Part shown: positions 37,409-42,625 of the stretch, in pieces
Layout: the number at the start of each line of letters is the position of its first letter
Numbering within the stretch: position 1 is the first letter of the stretch
Sequence record: ON529852.1
Reading direction: 5' to 3' (one strand)
Length of the DNA: 64,000 nt
Translations under genes and position numbers: made by a program
The notes under the pieces: model-generated
The model's database searches: none
What the model saw: only the letters and a program-made list of their open reading frames with translations
What the model was told of the DNA's origin: nothing

Positions 37409-38221
37409 CTATGCCTCTTGCAGGATGTCGGCCGCCTCCAGGCGGCCCTTGAGATAGGCGCGGGCGACGACCTGGGAGCCGAAGCCGATCGGATCGCCCA
37501 GCGGCATGTAGACGACCTCGTCGTCGCCATCCCACTTGCCCCGGATCAGGCCGACGTCCGGGTCCACCAGACCGTCGGTGCGGAACAGGCGATCCCCATA
37601 GACCAGCCAGTTGCGCACATAGGCGATCTGGTCGGGGGCGTCGGCGCGATAGCCGCCCCAGGCGACGTCGATGGTCTTGCAACGGACCTCGCCGCGTGCC
37701 GCCGTCTTCGACTTCTGGCGCCGGTTGTTCTTGGCCCGACGACGTTCGTGGCGGTTGACGTCACGCGCCGGCCCAGCCGCCAGGTCGCCCGGCAGCTTGT
37801 CGGACTTGAAGCGATTGCAGGGGCTGCACATGGTCTGGTAGTTGAAGTCCGCGTCCGGGCCGCCCTTGGATCGCGGCTGGATGTGGTCCTTGGTCATCAG
37901 CACCAGCTTGCCGCCCGCGTCGAGCGCGTAGAGGTTGAAGTGCCACTTGTTGGTGGTCGCCTCCCACTGGCCGGTCGACTTGCGCAGCACCGCCGAGCGC
38001 TCCTTGGCGAACCAGAGGCCGACAATCCCGCAAGAGACGCAGATCGAGGACTTCTGGAACAGGCGGTAGCGCGCCGACGTCATGTCGATCACGTCATCGT
38101 CGAAGACGTGCGTGTCCTTGTCCAGGTGCTGGAAGACTTCATCGCAGGTATAGAACCCCCGACGTTCATAGCCCGGCACAAAGCCGTGCGACCGCACCCC
38201 TTTAGGTCCGTTGGTCGTCAC
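37409..38221 (-). CDS. HNH endonuclease
   Basis: CVSCG...DHIQPRSKGG...NYQTMCSPCNRFKS. Confidence 0.85.
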   Translation of the reverse strand: MTTNGPKGVRSHGFVPGYERRGFYTCDEVFQHLDKDTHVFDDDVIDMTSARYRLFQKSSICVSCGIVGLWFAKERSAVLRKSTGQWEATTNKWHFNLYALDAGGKLVLMTKDHIQPRSKGGPDADFNYQTMCSPCNRFKSDKLPGDLAAGPARDVNRHERRRAKNNRRQKSKTAARGEVRCKTIDVAWGGYRADAPDQIAYVRNWLVYGDRLFRTDGLVDPDVGLIRGKWDGDDEVVYMPLGDPIGFGSQVVARAYLKGRLEAADILQEA

Positions 38222-38910
38222 TGCTCACCCGTATAGAGGTAGCCCTTGCCAACGCGCTGGAAGCTGTCCGGCGGGCCGCCAGCGGCGCCGATGGCCTCCA
38301 GGGCCGCGATGCTTTCGGCGGACGACCGATGGAAGACGCCGATGCCGCCCGCTTCAGCCCAGGCCAGGACGTTGGCGATCCGATCGTCGACCAGAATTTG
38401 GTGAGCGCCGTGCAGGCGGTGCATGAACTCGAACTTCCGCGCCGAGGTGGTGCAGATGAAGTTCTCGTCGGGCGTGGCGATCCGATCCTTCACCGTGGCG
38501 AAGACCATGGCGTCGTTATATTCTTCCTGGACCACCGCCGGCAACAGCACGGTCTCGACCCACACACGCTTATGGTAGGCGGCGCCCAGCCAGAATGGAT
38601 TGAGATAGTAGTCGTCTTCCGTGGCGCCGAACTTGGGCGCCGCTGTCACGATGACCGGCAAGCGGGCGGACGCCGCCATCAGACGCGCCGCCGCACGGTA
38701 GAGCGCCACGGCGCCCTCTTGAAGCGGCAAGTTGCGATAGAACTCGGTGCCCTTGATGCGCTCGTACATCTCGCGCTTGAGCGGATGGGAGGTGCCGGAC
38801 CGGTTGAGGTCGCGGCCCAGGGCGGGATCGACGTCGTAGCCAAGCGCGGCCATGCCGGCGCCGTAGTCGGCTTCGACGCCGTCCAGGTCCAGAGAGACGA
38901 CAAAATCCAT
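38218..38910 (-). CDS. HAD-superfamily 5'(3')-deoxyribonucleotidase-like
   Basis: LDLDGV (DxD), VTAAP, HKRVW, ILVDDRIANVLAWAEAGGIGV. Confidence 0.8.
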   Translation of the reverse strand: MDFVVSLDLDGVEADYGAGMAALGYDVDPALGRDLNRSGTSHPLKREMYERIKGTEFYRNLPLQEGAVALYRAAARLMAASARLPVIVTAAPKFGATEDDYYLNPFWLGAAYHKRVWVETVLLPAVVQEEYNDAMVFATVKDRIATPDENFICTTSARKFEFMHRLHGAHQILVDDRIANVLAWAEAGGIGVFHRSSAESIAALEAIGAAGGPPDSFQRVGKGYLYTGEQ

Positions 38911-39137
38911 CAAACGCCTACCTTCCACACACGGCGCGCCACCACGACGCCGACACCCATGCCGACGAGGGTCAGCACCGCAAGAAACCCGCCACGCAGG
39001 GCGTGTTCCGCCTGGCTCTCGCCATATCCGGCGAGACGCTTGATCCAGTAGGCGGAGCCGCCCATCATCACGATGGAGACGTAAACGCCGACCAGGACCG
39101 ACGCCCACAGGCGCAACGCCTTCACTCCGGCGCTCAC
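38910..39137 (-). CDS. small two-helix membrane protein
   Basis: GTG start overlapping stop at 39134; two hydrophobic helices. Confidence 0.65.
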   Translation of the reverse strand: MSAGVKALRLWASVLVGVYVSIVMMGGSAYWIKRLAGYGESQAEHALRGGFLAVLTLVGMGVGVVVARRVWKVGV

Positions 39138-40144
39138 GTCTGAACCGCGCCTTTCGCGATGCCGGACAGACGGATGGCGGCGTGGTTGCCCAGGATCGAG
39201 CCTTCCACCAACCACTCCACGCGGGTGCGGTAGAGCGGCGGGTGATCGACGGCGTCGCGGTAGCCAGGGGGCGCCGTTTCTTTGGAGATCAGGCCCAGGT
39301 CGGCGACTTGCGGCGGGTTGTTCATCAGCCCGACGACGCCTTCGGGCTTCAGCGCCACCACATAGATCGAGGTGGTGTCGCCGGGCTCGTTGAAGTCGAT
39401 GATCTGTGCATCGACTTCGTTGTAATCGGTGCACAGGATCGTGACGGTCCGCCCCTGCCGGGTCGTATAGGTGGCGATACGCCGGCCGTTCTCATCTTTA
39501 TCCCAGCCGATATAGACGTGATCCGTCGACGGCCTCGCGCCGACCGTCAGCAGGTTCCGCATGCGTTTGCTGGTGACGAGGTGGGTGGCGTTCGTCTGTT
39601 CGATGGCGCGATCCAGGACGGCCAACCGAAGCGGCCCGCCCATATCGAGAACGGCGTCGTCGGCGATCCGATGCTTCAGTCCTGTGGAATAGGCGTAGGC
39701 GGCCGTGCCGTCGCCATTGATCATCCGATCCACCAACGACTTCGCCGCCAGGCGGTGATGCATTCGGCGACGCAACGACAGCAACGAGGCACCGGAGTCC
39801 TCGACCAGGGCGGCGTCCACGTCGCAATCGCCGCACATGATCTTCAGCGTATCTTCGCTGCGGGGTTTGATGGTGGTGAAGCGCTCGCCCTCGCGCTTCA
39901 GGGCGCCCCCCGAGACGGTCAGGAACGGCAGCGCCTGCAAAAGGTCCTCCGCCACCAACGCTTCGAGATATTCGGCCTGGCGCATGTCGCCGCGCTCCGC
40001 TGCGTCTTCCCTCAGGTCTTCGAGATAGGAGACGACGACGGCCTGGCGCTCGCCGGGCTGCGCGGCGGGTGCGGCTTCAGCCACGCCGGCGGCGATCAGG
40101 GAGGCGGCGGAGGCCGTGGCGTACAGGAAGGCGCGGCGGTTCAT
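39134..40144 (-). CDS. major-capsid-protein paralog (HK97-fold, phiCbK-type) with N-terminal Tat signal
   Basis: NRRAFL + h-region + AEA; then LLQALPF, GDCDVD, INGD, LAVLDRAI, SKRMRNLL, IIDFNE, TSIYVV, YRTRVEWLV, AAIRLSGI, recalled as conserved blocks of this capsid family. Confidence 0.75.
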   Translation of the reverse strand: MNRRAFLYATASAASLIAAGVAEAAPAAQPGERQAVVVSYLEDLREDAAERGDMRQAEYLEALVAEDLLQALPFLTVSGGALKREGERFTTIKPRSEDTLKIMCGDCDVDAALVEDSGASLLSLRRRMHHRLAAKSLVDRMINGDGTAAYAYSTGLKHRIADDAVLDMGGPLRLAVLDRAIEQTNATHLVTSKRMRNLLTVGARPSTDHVYIGWDKDENGRRIATYTTRQGRTVTILCTDYNEVDAQIIDFNEPGDTTSIYVVALKPEGVVGLMNNPPQVADLGLISKETAPPGYRDAVDHPPLYRTRVEWLVEGSILGNHAAIRLSGIAKGAVQT

Positions 40145-40155
40145 GGTGAAGCCTT

Positions 40156-40530
40156 TCAGGAATGGATTTCGTCGCGCCCGTCCAGCGCGTCATCGCGCTG
40201 ACACAGGTCGACCAGACGGTGGACCGAGAGGTGGCGGTCGTAGATGGCGCAGCCGTCGAACTTGAATAGTTCCGAAGCCTCATGCATCAGGGCGCGCTGC
40301 ACCGCCGCCCAGAGCGTCTGGACGATCTCGGTGTCGGTCATCCACCGCGACAGCTTCCACTTGCGGCCCTTCCATTCGATGGGCAGGCCGGTGGTGGTGT
40401 CGATGCCGTCGGGGCAGATGATCTGGCACCAGGGCTCGTCGAACGAGCCCGAGACCTTGAACGTGAAGCCGGGATAGCGGCACCGCGCCACCACCGCCTC
40501 CAGTTCGGCGAAGGTTTTAGGATCGGACAT
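40156..40530 (-). CDS. hypothetical phage protein
   Basis: ORF in coupled chain. Confidence 0.7.
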   Translation of the reverse strand: MSDPKTFAELEAVVARCRYPGFTFKVSGSFDEPWCQIICPDGIDTTTGLPIEWKGRKWKLSRWMTDTEIVQTLWAAVQRALMHEASELFKFDGCAIYDRHLSVHRLVDLCQRDDALDGRDEIHS

Positions 40531-41060
40531 CAGGCGGGCGGCCGGGCTTTCGCCCGCGCCTCCAGCGCCGCCATCAAGCGGCTGTTGTCGTAGCGGACCT
40601 GTCCCGGCAGGGCGGCCTTCAGCGCCTTCACATCCTTGATGTGACGGGTGAACATCACCACAGGAGGCACGTCATCCGCCAGGGACTCGCCGGTGTAGTG
40701 ATACATTTCGGCCTCGATCACCAGGACGTCGCCGTCAAAGACCTTGACGCGCGGGCCGGTCAGTCCGGCCTTGTAGCCATTATGGGAATCCCAGGCCTGG
40801 CCCAGTTCCCCTTCGAAACGGGGGTCCTTGAGGTCGACGCGCACGTCGATCGGCCACGTCTCCTGCCCGATGACATAGCCGTCGGCCTGAACCTGGTTGA
40901 TCCAGTCCACAGCGAGCGAGGCGTGCTCATGGCGGAAGGCCTCCTGCGTGAAGGTCACGGCGCGCATCATCGGAGACGTGACAGCAGCCAAGGCGGCGGC
41001 GGGCAGGGCGCTCAGCGCCGCTGCGGCGCCGGCGGATTTGAACAGGGTGCGGCGGTTCAT
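40530..41060 (-). CDS. Tat-signal (twin-arginine) exported protein of unknown function
   Basis: Start MNRRTLFKSAGAAAALSALPAAALA; GAGGAG RBS. Confidence 0.75.
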   Translation of the reverse strand: MNRRTLFKSAGAAAALSALPAAALAAVTSPMMRAVTFTQEAFRHEHASLAVDWINQVQADGYVIGQETWPIDVRVDLKDPRFEGELGQAWDSHNGYKAGLTGPRVKVFDGDVLVIEAEMYHYTGESLADDVPPVVMFTRHIKDVKALKAALPGQVRYDNSRLMAALEARAKARPPA

Positions 41061-41070
41061 CAGGGACTCC

Positions 41071-41319
41071 TCAGTCGAGAGGGATGTCGTGATAGGCGAG
41101 CCAGTCCTGGAGTGCCCCGCGCGAAGGAAAGTCATTGACCTCCAACTCGCCCGAAGCCCCCGACAGGGTGCAGCCCCAGTAGCCTTCATCGTCATCCTGT
41201 TCGAGGAACTGCGCCGACACGTCGTCGTCTTCAGCCGCCTCCCCGAAGCGCTCGTACCAGATGAGACCGAGGTCGTCGTCGGGTTGCAGGACGGGGGTGT
41301 TGAAGAAGTCCAGACGCAA
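41071..41319 (-). CDS. small acidic hypothetical protein
   Basis: TTG start with GAGGA RBS; D/E-rich. Confidence 0.7.
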   Translation of the reverse strand: MRLDFFNTPVLQPDDDLGLIWYERFGEAAEDDDVSAQFLEQDDDEGYWGCTLSGASGELEVNDFPSRGALQDWLAYHDIPLD

Positions 41320-41339
41320 GGCGCATCCTCAGAGAAAGT

Positions 41340-41612
41340 AGAGTGGGAGCGAGGGCGGACGACGCATGAGCACAGGGCAAAAAGCACAAGGCAAAAAGCA
41401 ACCCAGCAAACGTGTCACAAACCCCGAGCAATAGAGCAGCGCCATTGTTTCAGGCGGCCCGAAGGCACGTTGTTTGATCGGGGCAGCACGACACGATCCC
41501 ATAAAAGGGTGGTGCTATGTTTCGATCATCAAGGCCCGAAGGCCTCGGATGAGTAGGCGCCGCCCGTATCCTCGCTCCCACCCCTCGGTTCAGGCAGGCC
41601 CGTAGGCCCGCC
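41340..41612 (-). ncRNA. putative structured non-coding RNA (~270 nt)
   Basis: 12-bp perfect plus 10-bp G-U-containing closing helix (41557-41581 with 41343-41365); C(UUCG)G and C(UACG)G hairpins; 14-nt U-rich tandem repeat; G-U pairs work only on the minus strand. Confidence 0.7.
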
Positions 41613-41630
41613 GTCCCCAAGTGGGTGAAA

Positions 41631-42227
41631 TCAGTTCAGCTTGAAGCGCTCGATCAACGCCACCACGGTCTCGGGGAGGGTGATGCGATGACCGGTGTTC
41701 AGGCCCAGAAGTTCGTCGGTGATCTCCGCCTTCTCGCGGCGAATGTCGCGCAGGGCGTCCTCCAGGCCGTCGTAGGCCGAACGAGGGACCCGAACCGAGA
41801 AGGTTTCGGCGGCGGTGACGCGAACGCCGGCGGTCTTGGCGGCCTCGTGTTGCGCCAGGAGGGCTTCGAAACGGCGCGGGGCCAGGGCGACGTCATCGCT
41901 CGCCGTGGCGGCGGGCGCATGCATGAAGACCTGCGACAGCAGCTTCTCCTTGCGGTCCAGCAGCGCCTTGCGGGTCAGGACGTCGTTGATGCCCGAGGTG
42001 TGGAAGGCCTTGCCCATCAGGGCGCGCACGGCGTAGGCGGCCTCGGTCAGCGCCAGGGCGTCCTCCAGGGTGGTGCGCATCGCCTGGCCGGCGGCGTCCA
42101 CCTTGCCGGCGAAATCGGGGGTCGTGTCATAGATGGAGAACGCCACGGCGTGCTCGGCGGTCTGCTTCAGGGCTTCGTCTTGAAGCGATTTGGCGAGCGC
42201 ATTGGCTTTGCGCAGATTGACTTGCAT
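41631..42227 (-). CDS. all-helical hypothetical protein upstream of the putative ncRNA
   Basis: MQVNLRKANAL...SGINDVL...LRDIRREKAEITDELLGLN; amphipathic helices, loosely reminiscent of DIP1984-like proteins (unverified). Confidence 0.75.
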   Translation of the reverse strand: MQVNLRKANALAKSLQDEALKQTAEHAVAFSIYDTTPDFAGKVDAAGQAMRTTLEDALALTEAAYAVRALMGKAFHTSGINDVLTRKALLDRKEKLLSQVFMHAPAATASDDVALAPRRFEALLAQHEAAKTAGVRVTAAETFSVRVPRSAYDGLEDALRDIRREKAEITDELLGLNTGHRITLPETVVALIERFKLN

Positions 42228-42255
42228 CGGGTCCTCCGTAAATCGTTTGCCGTGT

Positions 42256-42282
42256 TTACTGGCACTTGGCGCCGTCTGTCAA
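42256..42282 (-). promoter_or_regulatory. sigma70-like promoter (class II, 18-nt spacer)
   Basis: TTGACA-18nt-TAAACA upstream of GGAGGACCCG-ATG. Confidence 0.45.
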
Positions 42283-42289
42283 CTCTTAA

Positions 42290-42625
42290 TCACATGGGCT
42301 TCAACTTGATCAGCAGCGGCACGCCGTTGATGTTGAACCGCACGACCTCCACGCGGCCCGCGCGCACCAGCTTCTGGATCGTCGCGGCGGAGAAGCTTTT
42401 CTCCCTGAAGGCCCCGTCGGCGTCACGGGGCTGGCCCATCACGTTGTAGAGCCCGAGGCTGTCGCGCTCCATGGCGTGGGAATCATGGACCGCCATCATC
42501 ATCAGGGCGATCTCGGCCGCCGGCGCCACAGAGCCCTTGCGCAGGCCGCCCAGGTAACGGACGACCCGTTCCCGCTGCTGCGCCTGCAACTGCTGGCGAA
42601 AGGCGATCTGGGACGCGGTGGGCAT
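42290..42625 (-). CDS. hypothetical protein
   Basis: ORF in coupled chain. Confidence 0.65.
   Translation of the reverse strand: MPTASQIAFRQQLQAQQRERVVRYLGGLRKGSVAPAAEIALMMMAVHDSHAMERDSLGLYNVMGQPRDADGAFREKSFSAATIQKLVRAGRVEVVRFNINGVPLLIKLKPM

What the first reader, a model, noticed from the sequence alone, without database searches (positions are those of the whole stretch)
39134..40144. Major capsid protein paralog fused to a twin-arginine export signal
Seen in sequence: the N-terminus MNRRAFLYATASAASLIAAGVAEA has a Tat motif (RRxFL), an h-region and an AxA cleavage site. The rest carries blocks I recall from phiCbK-type HK97-fold major capsid proteins (LPF, GDxDVD, INGD, LAVLDxAI, SKRMRNLL, IDFNE, TSIYVV, RTRVEWLV). 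The segment between LPF and GDxDVD looks shorter than in the canonical protein, at the expected E-loop position (inference from memory). The gene sits among early accessory genes, far from any portal, terminase or tail gene. Capsid proteins are normally cytoplasmic, so a periplasm-targeted capsid fold would be novel. Possible roles: a periplasmic decoy or superinfection factor, a small encapsulin-like shell, or a membrane-tethered nucleator of the prolate head.
Basis: partly seen in the sequence, partly recalled or inferred. Interest (0 to 1): 0.87.

Follow-up and report, generated by a model that had tools for sequence, protein, structure and literature searches.

The report
Capsid-fold protein with Tat export signal
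A giant Brevundimonas phage carries a second, diverged copy of its head-shell protein that starts with a conserved twin-arginine export signal, one member of a previously undescribed phage family of capsid-fold proteins apparently sent to the periplasm instead of into virions.

Summary
Window 39134-40144 (minus strand) is KABACHOK_02020 of Brevundimonas phage vB_BpoS-Kabachok. It encodes 336 aa with a Tat-type N-terminus (RR motif, 18-residue uncharged h-region, AxA site) followed by a complete HK97-fold domain. That domain is 36-39% identical to the phage's real major capsid protein, which lies 194 kb away.

The model is confident (pLDDT 91), and Foldseek returns only capsid and encapsulin folds.

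It is not a one-off. An exhaustive profile search found 18 full-length relatives at 26-65% identity, and all 18 start with a Tat-like signal, against 0 of 114 ordinary capsid proteins. Three half-size variants keep only the signal plus the A-domain half. One of them is CcrRogue gp023, annotated 'putative TAT signal protein'.

The family has lost the capsid-invariant E-loop arginine, and it varies in three loop lengths that real capsid proteins hold fixed.

The gene is dispensable. Same-species phage Domovoi lacks exactly this gene and has the same head size.

Most likely it is a Tat-exported, non-virion accessory protein acting in the cell envelope. Its role is unknown; superinfection exclusion is my inference. 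Export itself is untested, and the Tat HMM scores fall below their curated cut-offs.

The parts
39134..40144 (-). KABACHOK_02020: 336-aa Tat-signal / HK97-fold capsid-protein paralog (stop codon included)
   Evidence: ORF list and translation; GenBank annotation; PHROG 212 E 5e-24; AlphaFold pLDDT 91.1, pTM 0.86; Foldseek finds only HK97-fold hits
40152..40157 (-). Shine-Dalgarno-like GAAAGG, 7 nt upstream of the ATG, overlapping the stop codon of the upstream gene
   Evidence: read directly from the sequence
40073..40144 (-). Predicted Tat signal peptide, residues 1-24: n-region M-N, twin arginine R3-R4 (40133-40138), h-region, A-E-A|A cleavage motif
   Evidence: TIGR01409 14.3 bits, below the 16.7 cut-off; conserved in Papperlapapp, P0002 and P0003 with synonymous codon changes at N2, R3, R4 and F6; AlphaFold pLDDT 47-49, i.e. 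disordered
40037..40072 (-). Ala/Pro-rich linker, residues 25-36. It has no counterpart in capsid proteins, and its length varies across the family.
   Evidence: alignments A2 and A5; 25% of its residues differ between Kabachok and Papperlapapp
39929..40036 (-). N-arm, residues 37-72 (three helices). It aligns with the very N-terminus of the true capsid protein.
   Evidence: DSSP of the model; alignments
39815..39928 (-). Shortened E-loop region, residues 73-110. A 16-residue deletion removes the block that holds the capsid-invariant Arg.
   Evidence: gap; hairpin in both models; Arg in 100% of 107 capsid proteins, 0% of 18 family members; block length 43-47 in capsid proteins, 29 here
39716..39787 (-). 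Spine helix, residues 120-143 (24 residues)
   Evidence: DSSP of the model; this is the characteristic long helix of the fold as described in PMC3863775
39137..39652 (-). A-domain plus C-terminal P-domain strands, residues 165-336. This is the part retained by the half-size family members.
   Evidence: P0057, CcrRogue gp023 and P0167 match only this half; only 5-6% of its residues differ between Kabachok and Papperlapapp
39236..39286 (-). Family-specific insertion, residues 287-303, in the loop before the last P-domain strands
   Evidence: loop length is 6-11 in 107 capsid proteins and 15-36 in 8 of 18 family members; pLDDT dips to 78 here
38910..39137 (-). Neighbour KABACHOK_02010: 75-aa protein with two predicted transmembrane helices. 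Its GTG start overlaps the stop codon of the paralog.
   Evidence: no amino-acid change versus Papperlapapp
40156..40530 (-). Neighbour KABACHOK_02030: 124 aa, PHROG 1540, function unknown
40530..41060 (-). Neighbour KABACHOK_02040: 176 aa, a second, unrelated protein with a Tat-type N-terminus
   Evidence: Pfam TAT_signal 18.6 bits, below the 22.7 cut-off; orthologs keep the signal; the CcrColossus ortholog gp274 is annotated 'putative TAT signal protein'

Best explanation
KABACHOK_02020 is a diverged paralog of the phiCbK-type (HK97-fold) major capsid protein. It has been taken out of capsid building and given an N-terminal twin-arginine signal.

Proposed mechanism:
1. The protein folds in the cytoplasm. 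Tat carries only folded substrates, which would explain why every family member uses Tat rather than Sec.
2. The host TatABC translocase recognises it through the RR motif and moves it across the inner membrane.
3. Signal peptidase probably releases it at the A-x-A site after residue 24.
4. It then acts in the periplasm as a non-virion accessory factor.

What is shown here: the fold, the paralogy, the conserved signal architecture across a diverse family, the loss of capsid-lattice constraints, and the dispensability of the gene.

What is inferred: actual export and cleavage, and the role. My preferred guess for the role is an envelope-level interference function such as superinfection exclusion, carried mainly by the A-domain half.
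For: Fold and paralogy:
- Sequence matches to capsid families and to the phage's own capsid protein.
- A profile of the family matches solved capsid proteins 8cjz (phage Carin1), 3j4u and 3j40.
- Foldseek on the pLDDT-91 model gives 195 PDB hits and 168 viral hits at E <= 1e-3, all HK97-fold.

Signal:
- RR motif, h-region and AxA site are present.
- They are kept in orthologs of 90%, 63% and 60% identity, with synonymous changes in the N, R, R and F codons.
- They are kept in 18 of 18 long-form relatives down to 26% identity, including two from 35%-GC contigs, against 0 of 114 ordinary capsid proteins.
- Six of 17 members hit TIGR01409 at E <= 1, best 3.2e-4.
- Independent annotators labelled the half-size relative CcrRogue gp023 'putative TAT signal protein'.

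Release from capsid constraints:
- The E-loop Arg present in 100% of 107 capsid proteins is absent from all 18 members.
- Three segments whose lengths capsid proteins hold within narrow limits vary freely in the family. The E-loop block is 43-47 in capsid proteins and 19-29 in 11 of 18 members. The DLG..RTR loop is 6-11 versus 15-36 in 8 of 18. The loop after the conserved Tyr is always 3 versus 7-15 in 14 of 18.
- In BPP-1 the E-loop and P-domain form the inter-capsomer contacts (PMC3863775).
- Three half-size members keep only the signal plus the A-domain half.

Accessory status:
- There is a gene-precise presence/absence difference. Kabachok and Papperlapapp have the gene; Domovoi (same species), Marchewka and Bambus lack it.
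- Head dimensions are the same with and without it (PMC10070969).

Still functional:
- dN/dS is 0.29 overall. Changes concentrate in the signal, linker and insertion (24-29% of residues) against 5-11% in the folded core.

Context:
- The gene always lies in non-structural, co-directional small-ORF regions of large phage contigs.
- It repeatedly sits next to envelope-targeted proteins. In Kabachok these are a 2-TM protein and a second Tat protein. In CcrColossus, gp036 is paired with a lipoprotein BTLCP peptidase on the reverse strand. In CcrRogue, gp023 is followed by a lipoprotein.
- At the same locus in contig L007 the neighbours are 82%, 70% and 53% identical but the paralog only about 35%, which suggests cassette replacement or very fast divergence.
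Against: - No Tat HMM reaches its curated cut-off for this protein. TIGR01409 gives 14.3 against 16.7, and Pfam TAT_signal gives no hit. Other members are also sub-threshold (best 20.6 against 22.7).
- TatP and SignalP were not available, so the signal call rests on motif architecture and conservation.
- There are no expression, proteomic or localisation data.
- The fold and most core residues are intact, so some capsid-like assembly is not excluded.
- No known function exists for an extracytoplasmic HK97 fold, and no partner is conserved across all contexts.
- Most members are closer to the true capsid protein (38-54% identity) than to the query (26-38%), so a single origin of the family is not secure. 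The neighbour-joining tree has long branches.
- No PADLOC match.
Confidence: 0.6

Rival explanations
1. Signal-anchor variant. The Tat signal is not cleaved, and the capsid-fold domain stays tethered to the periplasmic face of the inner membrane by its h-region, as in Rieske-type Tat substrates.
For: The only Pfam hit of the N-terminus is the Rieske Tat signal family UCR_Fe-S_N, and it is very weak (E 0.6). Three of 18 members lack a clear AxA site. The neighbours include membrane proteins.
Against: Fifteen of 18 members have an A-x-A motif 23-32 residues from the start, and this protein has A-E-A|A at residue 24. The h-regions are short, with moderate hydrophobicity (mean Kyte-Doolittle 1.0-1.9). 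A flexible Ala/Pro linker follows, as in cleaved precursors.
Confidence: 0.15
2. Periplasmic assembly. After export the protein oligomerises into capsomer-like rings or a closed encapsulin-like shell.
For: The HK97 fold is intact with high model confidence. Core residues shared with capsid proteins are retained. The top PDB structural matches are Family 2 encapsulins.
Against: The true capsid protein matches the same encapsulins even better, so that ranking is not specific to the paralog. The lattice-forming E-loop Arg is lost, and the E-loop and P-loop lengths are unconstrained. Half-size members cannot form a shell. There is no Linocin_M18 or encapsulin Pfam hit and no cargo-type neighbour.
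Confidence: 0.1
3. Cytoplasmic minor head protein, for example a vertex or cap specialist like T4 gp24. The N-terminal extension would then be a propeptide removed during head maturation, not an export signal.
For: It is a capsid-protein paralog in a phage with an extreme prolate head. T4 uses a capsid paralog at its vertices (textbook knowledge). phiCbK capsid protein is processed near a terminus (PMC3556154).
Against: Closely related phages with the same head geometry lack the gene. It lies 194 kb from the head module. phiCbK virion proteomics listed only one capsid-fold protein. An RR, hydrophobic, AxA architecture conserved in 18 of 18 members is not a feature of maturation propeptides. 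The capsid-invariant E-loop Arg is absent.
Confidence: 0.07
4. Cytoplasmic decoy that titrates a host defence sensor recognising the capsid protein. The Tat-like N-terminus would be incidental or would serve to dispose of the complex.
For: Capsid proteins are common triggers of bacterial immunity (general knowledge). The gene is accessory, fast-evolving and cassette-like.
Against: A decoy must stay in the cytoplasm, yet the one feature conserved in every member is an export signal. Half-size members keep the signal but drop half of the fold.
Confidence: 0.05
5. Decaying duplicate or annotation artefact with no function.
For: It is dispensable. Its rate of protein change is higher than that of its neighbours.
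Against: The ORF is intact in every member. dN/dS is 0.29, with a strongly conserved core. The model is confident. The family spans 26-65% identity and retains its architecture.
Confidence: 0.03

Closest known systems
phiCbK-type major capsid protein (PHROG 212; here KABACHOK_04650, 311 aa)
   Same: Same HK97 fold and the same order of elements. It is 36-39% identical over residues 53-334. Most core residues are shared.
   Different: The true capsid protein has no signal peptide or linker. It has a full E-loop of 43-47 residues with an invariant Arg, and fixed loop lengths. It lies in the head module and is present in every related phage.
CcrColossus gp036
   Same: It belongs to the same family and equals P0030: a Tat-type N-terminus followed by a full capsid-fold domain. 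It was noted in 2012 as a 'significantly diverged and translocated' duplicate of the capsid gene (PMC3556154).
   Different: It is only about 29% identical to the query and keeps a full-length E-loop block. It sits near the portal gene on the reverse strand, next to a lipoprotein BTLCP peptidase. The paper does not mention a Tat signal; it contains no occurrence of 'TAT' or 'twin-arginine'.
CcrRogue gp023 'putative TAT signal protein' (also in phage BL64; P0057 and P0167 have the same architecture)
   Same: It has a Tat-type N-terminus and an A-domain half homologous to capsid proteins, 51-55% identical over residues 34-112.
   Different: It is half-size (191-214 aa). It lacks the N-arm, E-loop and spine helix.
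T4 gp24 vertex protein (capsid-protein paralog with a structural role)
   Same: It is a paralog of the phage's own major capsid protein.
   Different: gp24 is cytoplasmic, is built into virions and is encoded in the head module (textbook knowledge). None of this fits here.
Encapsulins, especially Family 2 (8t6r, 6x8m, 9bix)
   Same: They are the best structural matches in the PDB, with E 3e-10 to 1e-7 and TM 0.52-0.72. They are a non-virion use of the HK97 fold.
   Different: Encapsulins are cytoplasmic and have adjacent cargo genes. The true capsid protein matches them better than the paralog does. There is no encapsulin Pfam hit.
Periplasmic or envelope superinfection-exclusion proteins of lytic phages (T4 Spackle, T5 Llp)
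   Same: They are phage-encoded, dispensable, exported to the envelope and act during infection (PMC7677548 and PMC9586334, listed).
   Different: There is no sequence or fold relationship. Those proteins are small and use Sec or lipoprotein signals. No exclusion activity has been shown for this family.

Membership tests
HK97-fold major capsid proteins (gp7/epsilon15-phiCbK type) | Sequence-profile match to capsid protein families | tested here: met
   PHROG 212 E 5e-24. NCBIfam NF045672 E 4e-16, but 59.3 bits is below the 75-bit cut-off. Pfam GP7 gives no hit for this protein, whereas the true capsid protein hits it.
HK97-fold major capsid proteins (gp7/epsilon15-phiCbK type) | HK97 fold: N-arm, E-loop hairpin, long spine helix, A-domain sheet with two helices, P-domain strands | tested here: met
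   AlphaFold pLDDT 91.1 with that order of elements. Foldseek finds only HK97-fold hits in the PDB and BFVD.
HK97-fold major capsid proteins (gp7/epsilon15-phiCbK type) | Full-length E-loop carrying the family-invariant Arg | tested here: not met
   A 16-residue deletion is present. The Arg occurs in 107 of 107 capsid proteins and 0 of 18 Tat-family members.
HK97-fold major capsid proteins (gp7/epsilon15-phiCbK type) | Encoded in the head module and present in all related phages | tested here: not met
   It lies 194 kb from the real capsid gene, among non-structural genes. It is absent from Domovoi, Marchewka and Bambus.
HK97-fold major capsid proteins (gp7/epsilon15-phiCbK type) | Component of the virion shell | not testable with these tools
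   No proteome exists for these phages. phiCbK virion proteomics lists one capsid-fold protein only.
Tat (twin-arginine) substrates | Twin-arginine motif near the N-terminus, followed by two hydrophobic residues | tested here: met
   Residues 2-7 read N-R-R-A-F-L. RR (KR in one member) is present in 18 of 18 members.
Tat (twin-arginine) substrates | Moderately hydrophobic h-region and an A-x-A type c-region | tested here: met
   The h-region is 18 residues with mean Kyte-Doolittle 1.64, and A-E-A|A follows at residue 24. Fifteen of 18 members have an AxA site at residues 23-32.
Tat (twin-arginine) substrates | Score above the curated cut-off of the Tat signal HMMs | tested here: not met
   TIGR01409 gives 14.3 bits against 16.7. 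Pfam PF10518 gives no hit for this protein. Other members score 14.3-20.6 against 22.7. Six of 17 hit TIGR01409 at E <= 1.
Tat (twin-arginine) substrates | Tat-dependent translocation of the folded protein | not testable with these tools
   This needs localisation data.
Encapsulins | Encapsulin shell-protein signature and an adjacent cargo gene | tested here: not met
   There is no Linocin_M18 or encapsulin Pfam hit. The neighbours have no cargo-type domains. The structural similarity to Family 2 encapsulins is shared with, and stronger in, the true capsid protein.
Known anti-phage defence or candidate defence proteins (PADLOC) | Match to a PADLOC model | tested here: not met
   No hits for the protein, its three neighbours, P0011 or P0030.

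The most novel reading that the evidence does not exclude
Large phiCbK-like phages export a folded capsid-fold protein through the host Tat system. In the periplasm it would form capsomer-like rings or lattices that plug or shield an envelope structure used by incoming phages. That would be the first extracytoplasmic assembly built from the HK97 fold, and a new class of phage-encoded Tat substrate.
Probability: 0.12. Interest if true: 0.9.

Novelty: new variant of a known kind. Interest (0 to 1): 0.75.

Why it matters
Every known use of the HK97 fold is a cytoplasmic shell: phage and herpesvirus capsids, gene transfer agents, PICI capsids and encapsulins. This family combines that fold with a conserved export signal and has shed the constraints of shell geometry. 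It comprises 18 full-length and three half-size members in isolates and metagenomes, from both high-GC and low-GC phages.

If export is confirmed, several things follow:
- The fold gains a new cellular compartment and a non-shell function.
- Phage-encoded substrates are added to Tat biology. A 2026 review of the Tat system does not mention capsid proteins.
- Automatic 'major capsid protein' labels on such genes become a known annotation trap.
- The gene-precise presence/absence difference between same-species phages provides a natural comparison for descriptive studies.

Tried and rejected
1. Reading 39134-40144 on the plus strand gives no ORF; the gene is on the minus strand.

2. phmmer of the protein against the PDB, and a profile of 8 sequences, found nothing. 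Only the 130-sequence profile reached solved capsids.

3. The search for related loci with the 17-member alignment failed because no stretch was conserved enough. With the three close orthologs it found only ordinary capsid genes in IMG/VR, nothing in GTDB genomes and nothing in JGI metagenomes. The query's own clade is therefore rare.

4. The word-indexed search with the family profile returned mostly ordinary capsid proteins. Two 351-aa hits (P0162, P0164) are true capsid genes with an over-extended start, not family members.

5. I looked for a conserved partner gene. The roughly 175-aa proteins upstream in L011 and L014 are not homologs of KABACHOK_02040, and no neighbour is shared by all contexts.

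6. I tried to locate the second capsid-like place reported for CcrPW and CcrBL9. It is not in CcrPW 12-27 kb or CcrBL9 187-207 kb, and remains unresolved.

7. The idea that similarity to encapsulins is special to the paralog was rejected by the control with the true capsid model.

8. No promoter-like site was found in 38000-42500. The single terminator-like site lies inside KABACHOK_02010, and the count (1) is below the shuffle mean of 2.8.

9. No tRNA or Rfam match in the window.

11. Literature searches combining capsid or HK97 with twin-arginine or periplasm found no description of such proteins.
Full report
**What the window is.** Window 38000-42000 is 100% identical to Brevundimonas phage vB_BpoS-Kabachok (ON529852.1). 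This is a 356-kb siphophage of the Dolichocephalovirinae with a very long prolate head. Window position equals record position minus 62000.

The finding's coordinates are exactly an ORF on the minus strand: 39134-40144, ATG start, 336 aa. It is annotated KABACHOK_02020 'major capsid protein'. A GAAAGG hexamer lies 7 nt upstream of the ATG, and the upstream gene stops 11 nt upstream.

The gene sits in a long co-directional run of small genes. These are mostly hypothetical, together with an HNH nuclease, a deoxyribonucleotidase, a CCA-adding enzyme, a phosphoribosyltransferase-like protein and a HAD-like protein. The phage's real capsid gene, KABACHOK_04650 (311 aa), is 194 kb away.

**Capsid homology and fold.**
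- The protein matches PHROG 212 'major head protein' (E 5e-24, residues 97-332).
- It matches NCBIfam MCP_gp7_epsi_15 (E 4e-16, below that model's cut-off).
- tblastn gives 35-38% identity over residues 46/53-334 to the capsid genes of all phiCbK-like Caulobacter and Brevundimonas phages.
- A 130-sequence profile reaches three solved capsid proteins: 8cjz (phage Carin1), 3j4u and 3j40.
- The AlphaFold model is confident (pLDDT 91.1, pTM 0.86). Residues 1-30 are disordered. The rest shows N-arm helices, a hairpin, a 24-residue spine helix, an A-domain sheet with two helices and terminal P-domain strands.
- Foldseek returns 195 PDB and 168 viral matches at E <= 1e-3, all HK97-fold proteins.
- The top PDB hits are Family 2 encapsulins. 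A control with a true capsid protein of the same family (P0160, pLDDT 96) gives the same encapsulins with better scores. That similarity is therefore a property of the whole capsid family, not of the paralog.

**The signal.** Residues 2-7 read N-R-R-A-F-L. An 18-residue uncharged h-region follows (mean Kyte-Doolittle 1.64), then A-E-A|A at residue 24, then an Ala/Pro-rich linker. This matches the twin-arginine signal architecture known from the Tat literature.

The HMM evidence is weak on its own. TIGR01409 gives 14.3 bits against a cut-off of 16.7, and Pfam TAT_signal gives no hit.

The strength lies in conservation:
- Papperlapapp (90% identity) and two metagenomic orthologs (63% and 60%) keep the signal.
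- In one ortholog the Asn, both Arg and the Phe codons all differ synonymously from Kabachok, so the peptide is translated and selected.
- An exhaustive profile search of 1.84 billion representatives gave 245 hits. The hits longer than an ordinary capsid protein nearly all begin with RR, an uncharged stretch and AxA.
- In total, 18 of 18 long-form members have such a start, against 0 of 114 other sequences (Fisher p = 1.5e-22).
- Two members come from 35%-GC contigs and the rest from 61-67% GC, so the feature is not a by-product of Ala-rich high-GC coding.

**Loss of capsid constraints.** Column statistics compare 107 ordinary capsid proteins with the 18 members.
- Core-fold residues are kept.
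- The Arg that is invariant in capsid proteins (100%) and a nearby Asn (88%), both in the E-loop block, are at 0% in the family.
- The E-loop block is 43-47 residues in all 107 capsid proteins. It is 19-29 in 11 of 18 members, and 29 in the query.
- The loop before the last P-domain strands is 6-11 residues in capsid proteins and 15-36 in 8 of 18 members.
- A loop after a conserved Tyr is always 3 residues in capsid proteins and 7-15 in 14 of 18 members.
- The two models place the query's 16-residue deletion in the E-loop hairpin.
- In BPP-1, a solved relative, the E-loop and P-domain make the inter-capsomer ring contacts (PMC3863775). I infer that the family is no longer under lattice-geometry selection.

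Three half-size proteins carry the argument further. CcrRogue gp023 (also in BL64), P0057 and P0167 consist of a Tat-type signal fused directly to the A-domain and C-terminal half. GenBank annotators had already called CcrRogue gp023 a 'putative TAT signal protein'.

**Dispensability and evolution.** Domovoi is the same species as Kabachok according to PMC10070969, and Marchewka and Bambus are close relatives. All three lack exactly this gene. In Domovoi the two flanking genes abut with an overlapping stop and start. Head dimensions are 53 x 377 nm for Kabachok, 53 x 363 nm for Papperlapapp and 55 x 381 nm for Domovoi. The protein is therefore not needed to build or size the head.

Between Kabachok and Papperlapapp, dN/dS is 0.29, against 0.03-0.08 for most neighbours. 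The 33 amino-acid changes concentrate in the signal (29% of residues), the linker (25%) and the family-specific insertion (24%). The folded core changes at 5-11% of residues.

In contig L007 the gene occupies the same locus. There the neighbours are 82%, 70% and 53% identical, but the paralog is only about 35% identical and has a full-length E-loop. This suggests cassette replacement or very rapid divergence.

A neighbour-joining tree groups the signal-bearing proteins away from the true Dolichocephalovirinae capsid proteins. However, most members are closer to the true capsid protein than to the query, so a single origin is likely but not proven.

**Context.** All twelve contexts examined are non-structural regions of large phage genomes or contigs.

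Envelope-targeted neighbours recur:
- In Kabachok, a 75-aa two-TM protein lies immediately downstream. Two genes upstream is a second, unrelated Tat-type protein (KABACHOK_02040), whose CcrColossus ortholog is annotated 'putative TAT signal protein'.
- In CcrColossus, family member gp036 forms a reverse-strand pair with gp037, a lipobox-bearing BTLCP (Peptidase_C93) protein.
- In CcrRogue, gp023 is followed by a lipoprotein.

**Prior knowledge.** Gill et al. 2012 noted Colossus gene 36 as a diverged, translocated duplicate of the capsid gene, but the paper does not mention a Tat signal (PMC3556154). Searches combining HK97 or capsid with twin-arginine or periplasm found nothing relevant. A 2026 Tat review does not mention capsid proteins.

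**Conclusion.** The best-supported reading is a Tat-exported, non-virion capsid-fold paralog that acts in the cell envelope (confidence 0.6). Shown here are the fold, the paralogy, the family-wide signal, the relaxed lattice constraints, the dispensability and purifying selection on the core. Inferred are export, cleavage and the role.

I favour an envelope-level interference role such as superinfection exclusion. The gene is accessory, fast-evolving, cassette-like and keeps company with other exported proteins. No evidence addresses this directly.

The rivals are a membrane-tethered form, a periplasmic ring or shell, a minor head protein, a cytoplasmic decoy and a decaying duplicate. They are ranked in the Rival explanations section.

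Noticed in passing
window 40530-41060 (-): KABACHOK_02040 (176 aa) is a second, unrelated protein with a Tat-type N-terminus. Pfam TAT_signal gives 18.6 bits, below the cut-off. Orthologs in L003, L007 and CcrColossus (gp274, 'putative TAT signal protein') keep the signal. These phages therefore encode several predicted Tat substrates.
   Followed up: partly
window 38910-39137 (-): KABACHOK_02010 is a 75-aa protein with two predicted transmembrane helices. Its GTG start overlaps the paralog's stop codon. It has no amino-acid change versus Papperlapapp despite 3.5% nucleotide divergence.
   Followed up: partly
window 37409-38221 (-): The HNH nuclease gene KABACHOK_01990 is 100% nucleotide-identical between Kabachok and Papperlapapp over 813 bp, while the flanking genes differ by 2-7%. 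This pattern would fit recent homing or gene conversion.
   Followed up: no
L018:3496-5176 (CcrColossus gp036-gp037): This is a reverse-strand two-gene pair just before the portal gene. It consists of the Tat-signal capsid paralog gp036 and gp037, which has a lipobox and a Peptidase_C93 (BTLCP) domain at 31.2 bits. CcrPW keeps the peptidase but has no paralog beside it.
   Followed up: partly
L030:12224-13077 (CcrRogue gp023-gp024): The half-size Tat-signal / capsid A-domain protein gp023 is followed by a lipoprotein, gp024. gp023 is present in CcrRogue and BL64. In phiCbK and the other listed records the only match was the true capsid gene.
   Followed up: partly
profile A7 versus PDB 8cjz: The N-terminal element aligns colinearly, but the two C-terminal elements align in swapped order. 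At sequence level the phiCbK-type capsid family therefore has the HK97 order, while its detectable relatives (Carin1, BPP-1, epsilon15) have the permuted BPP order described in PMC3863775.
   Followed up: no
models ma5cc28211043 and meaf507e7b81f: Family 2A/2B encapsulins are the closest solved structures to phiCbK-type capsid proteins. For the true capsid protein E reaches 4e-15 and TM about 0.65, ahead of any phage capsid in the PDB. A weak sequence-profile hit to the Family 2B encapsulin 9bix also appeared.
   Followed up: partly
L007:10001-11104 versus window 39134-40144: The same locus, with neighbours 82%, 70% and 53% identical, holds a family member only about 35% identical to the query and with a full-length E-loop. 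The locus looks like an exchange hot spot.
   Followed up: partly
CcrPW, CcrBL9, BL57 (phage records): tblastn reports a second capsid-like place in these records. I did not locate them. BFVD lists a 245-aa 'Major capsid protein' of CcrBL9 (A0A385EEN3) that may be one of them.
   Followed up: partly
L025 and L027 (sample SRR22868754): Two different family members, P0020 and P0016, come from two contigs (19.8 kb and 114.6 kb) of the same sample. This could be one phage with two copies or two phages.
   Followed up: no
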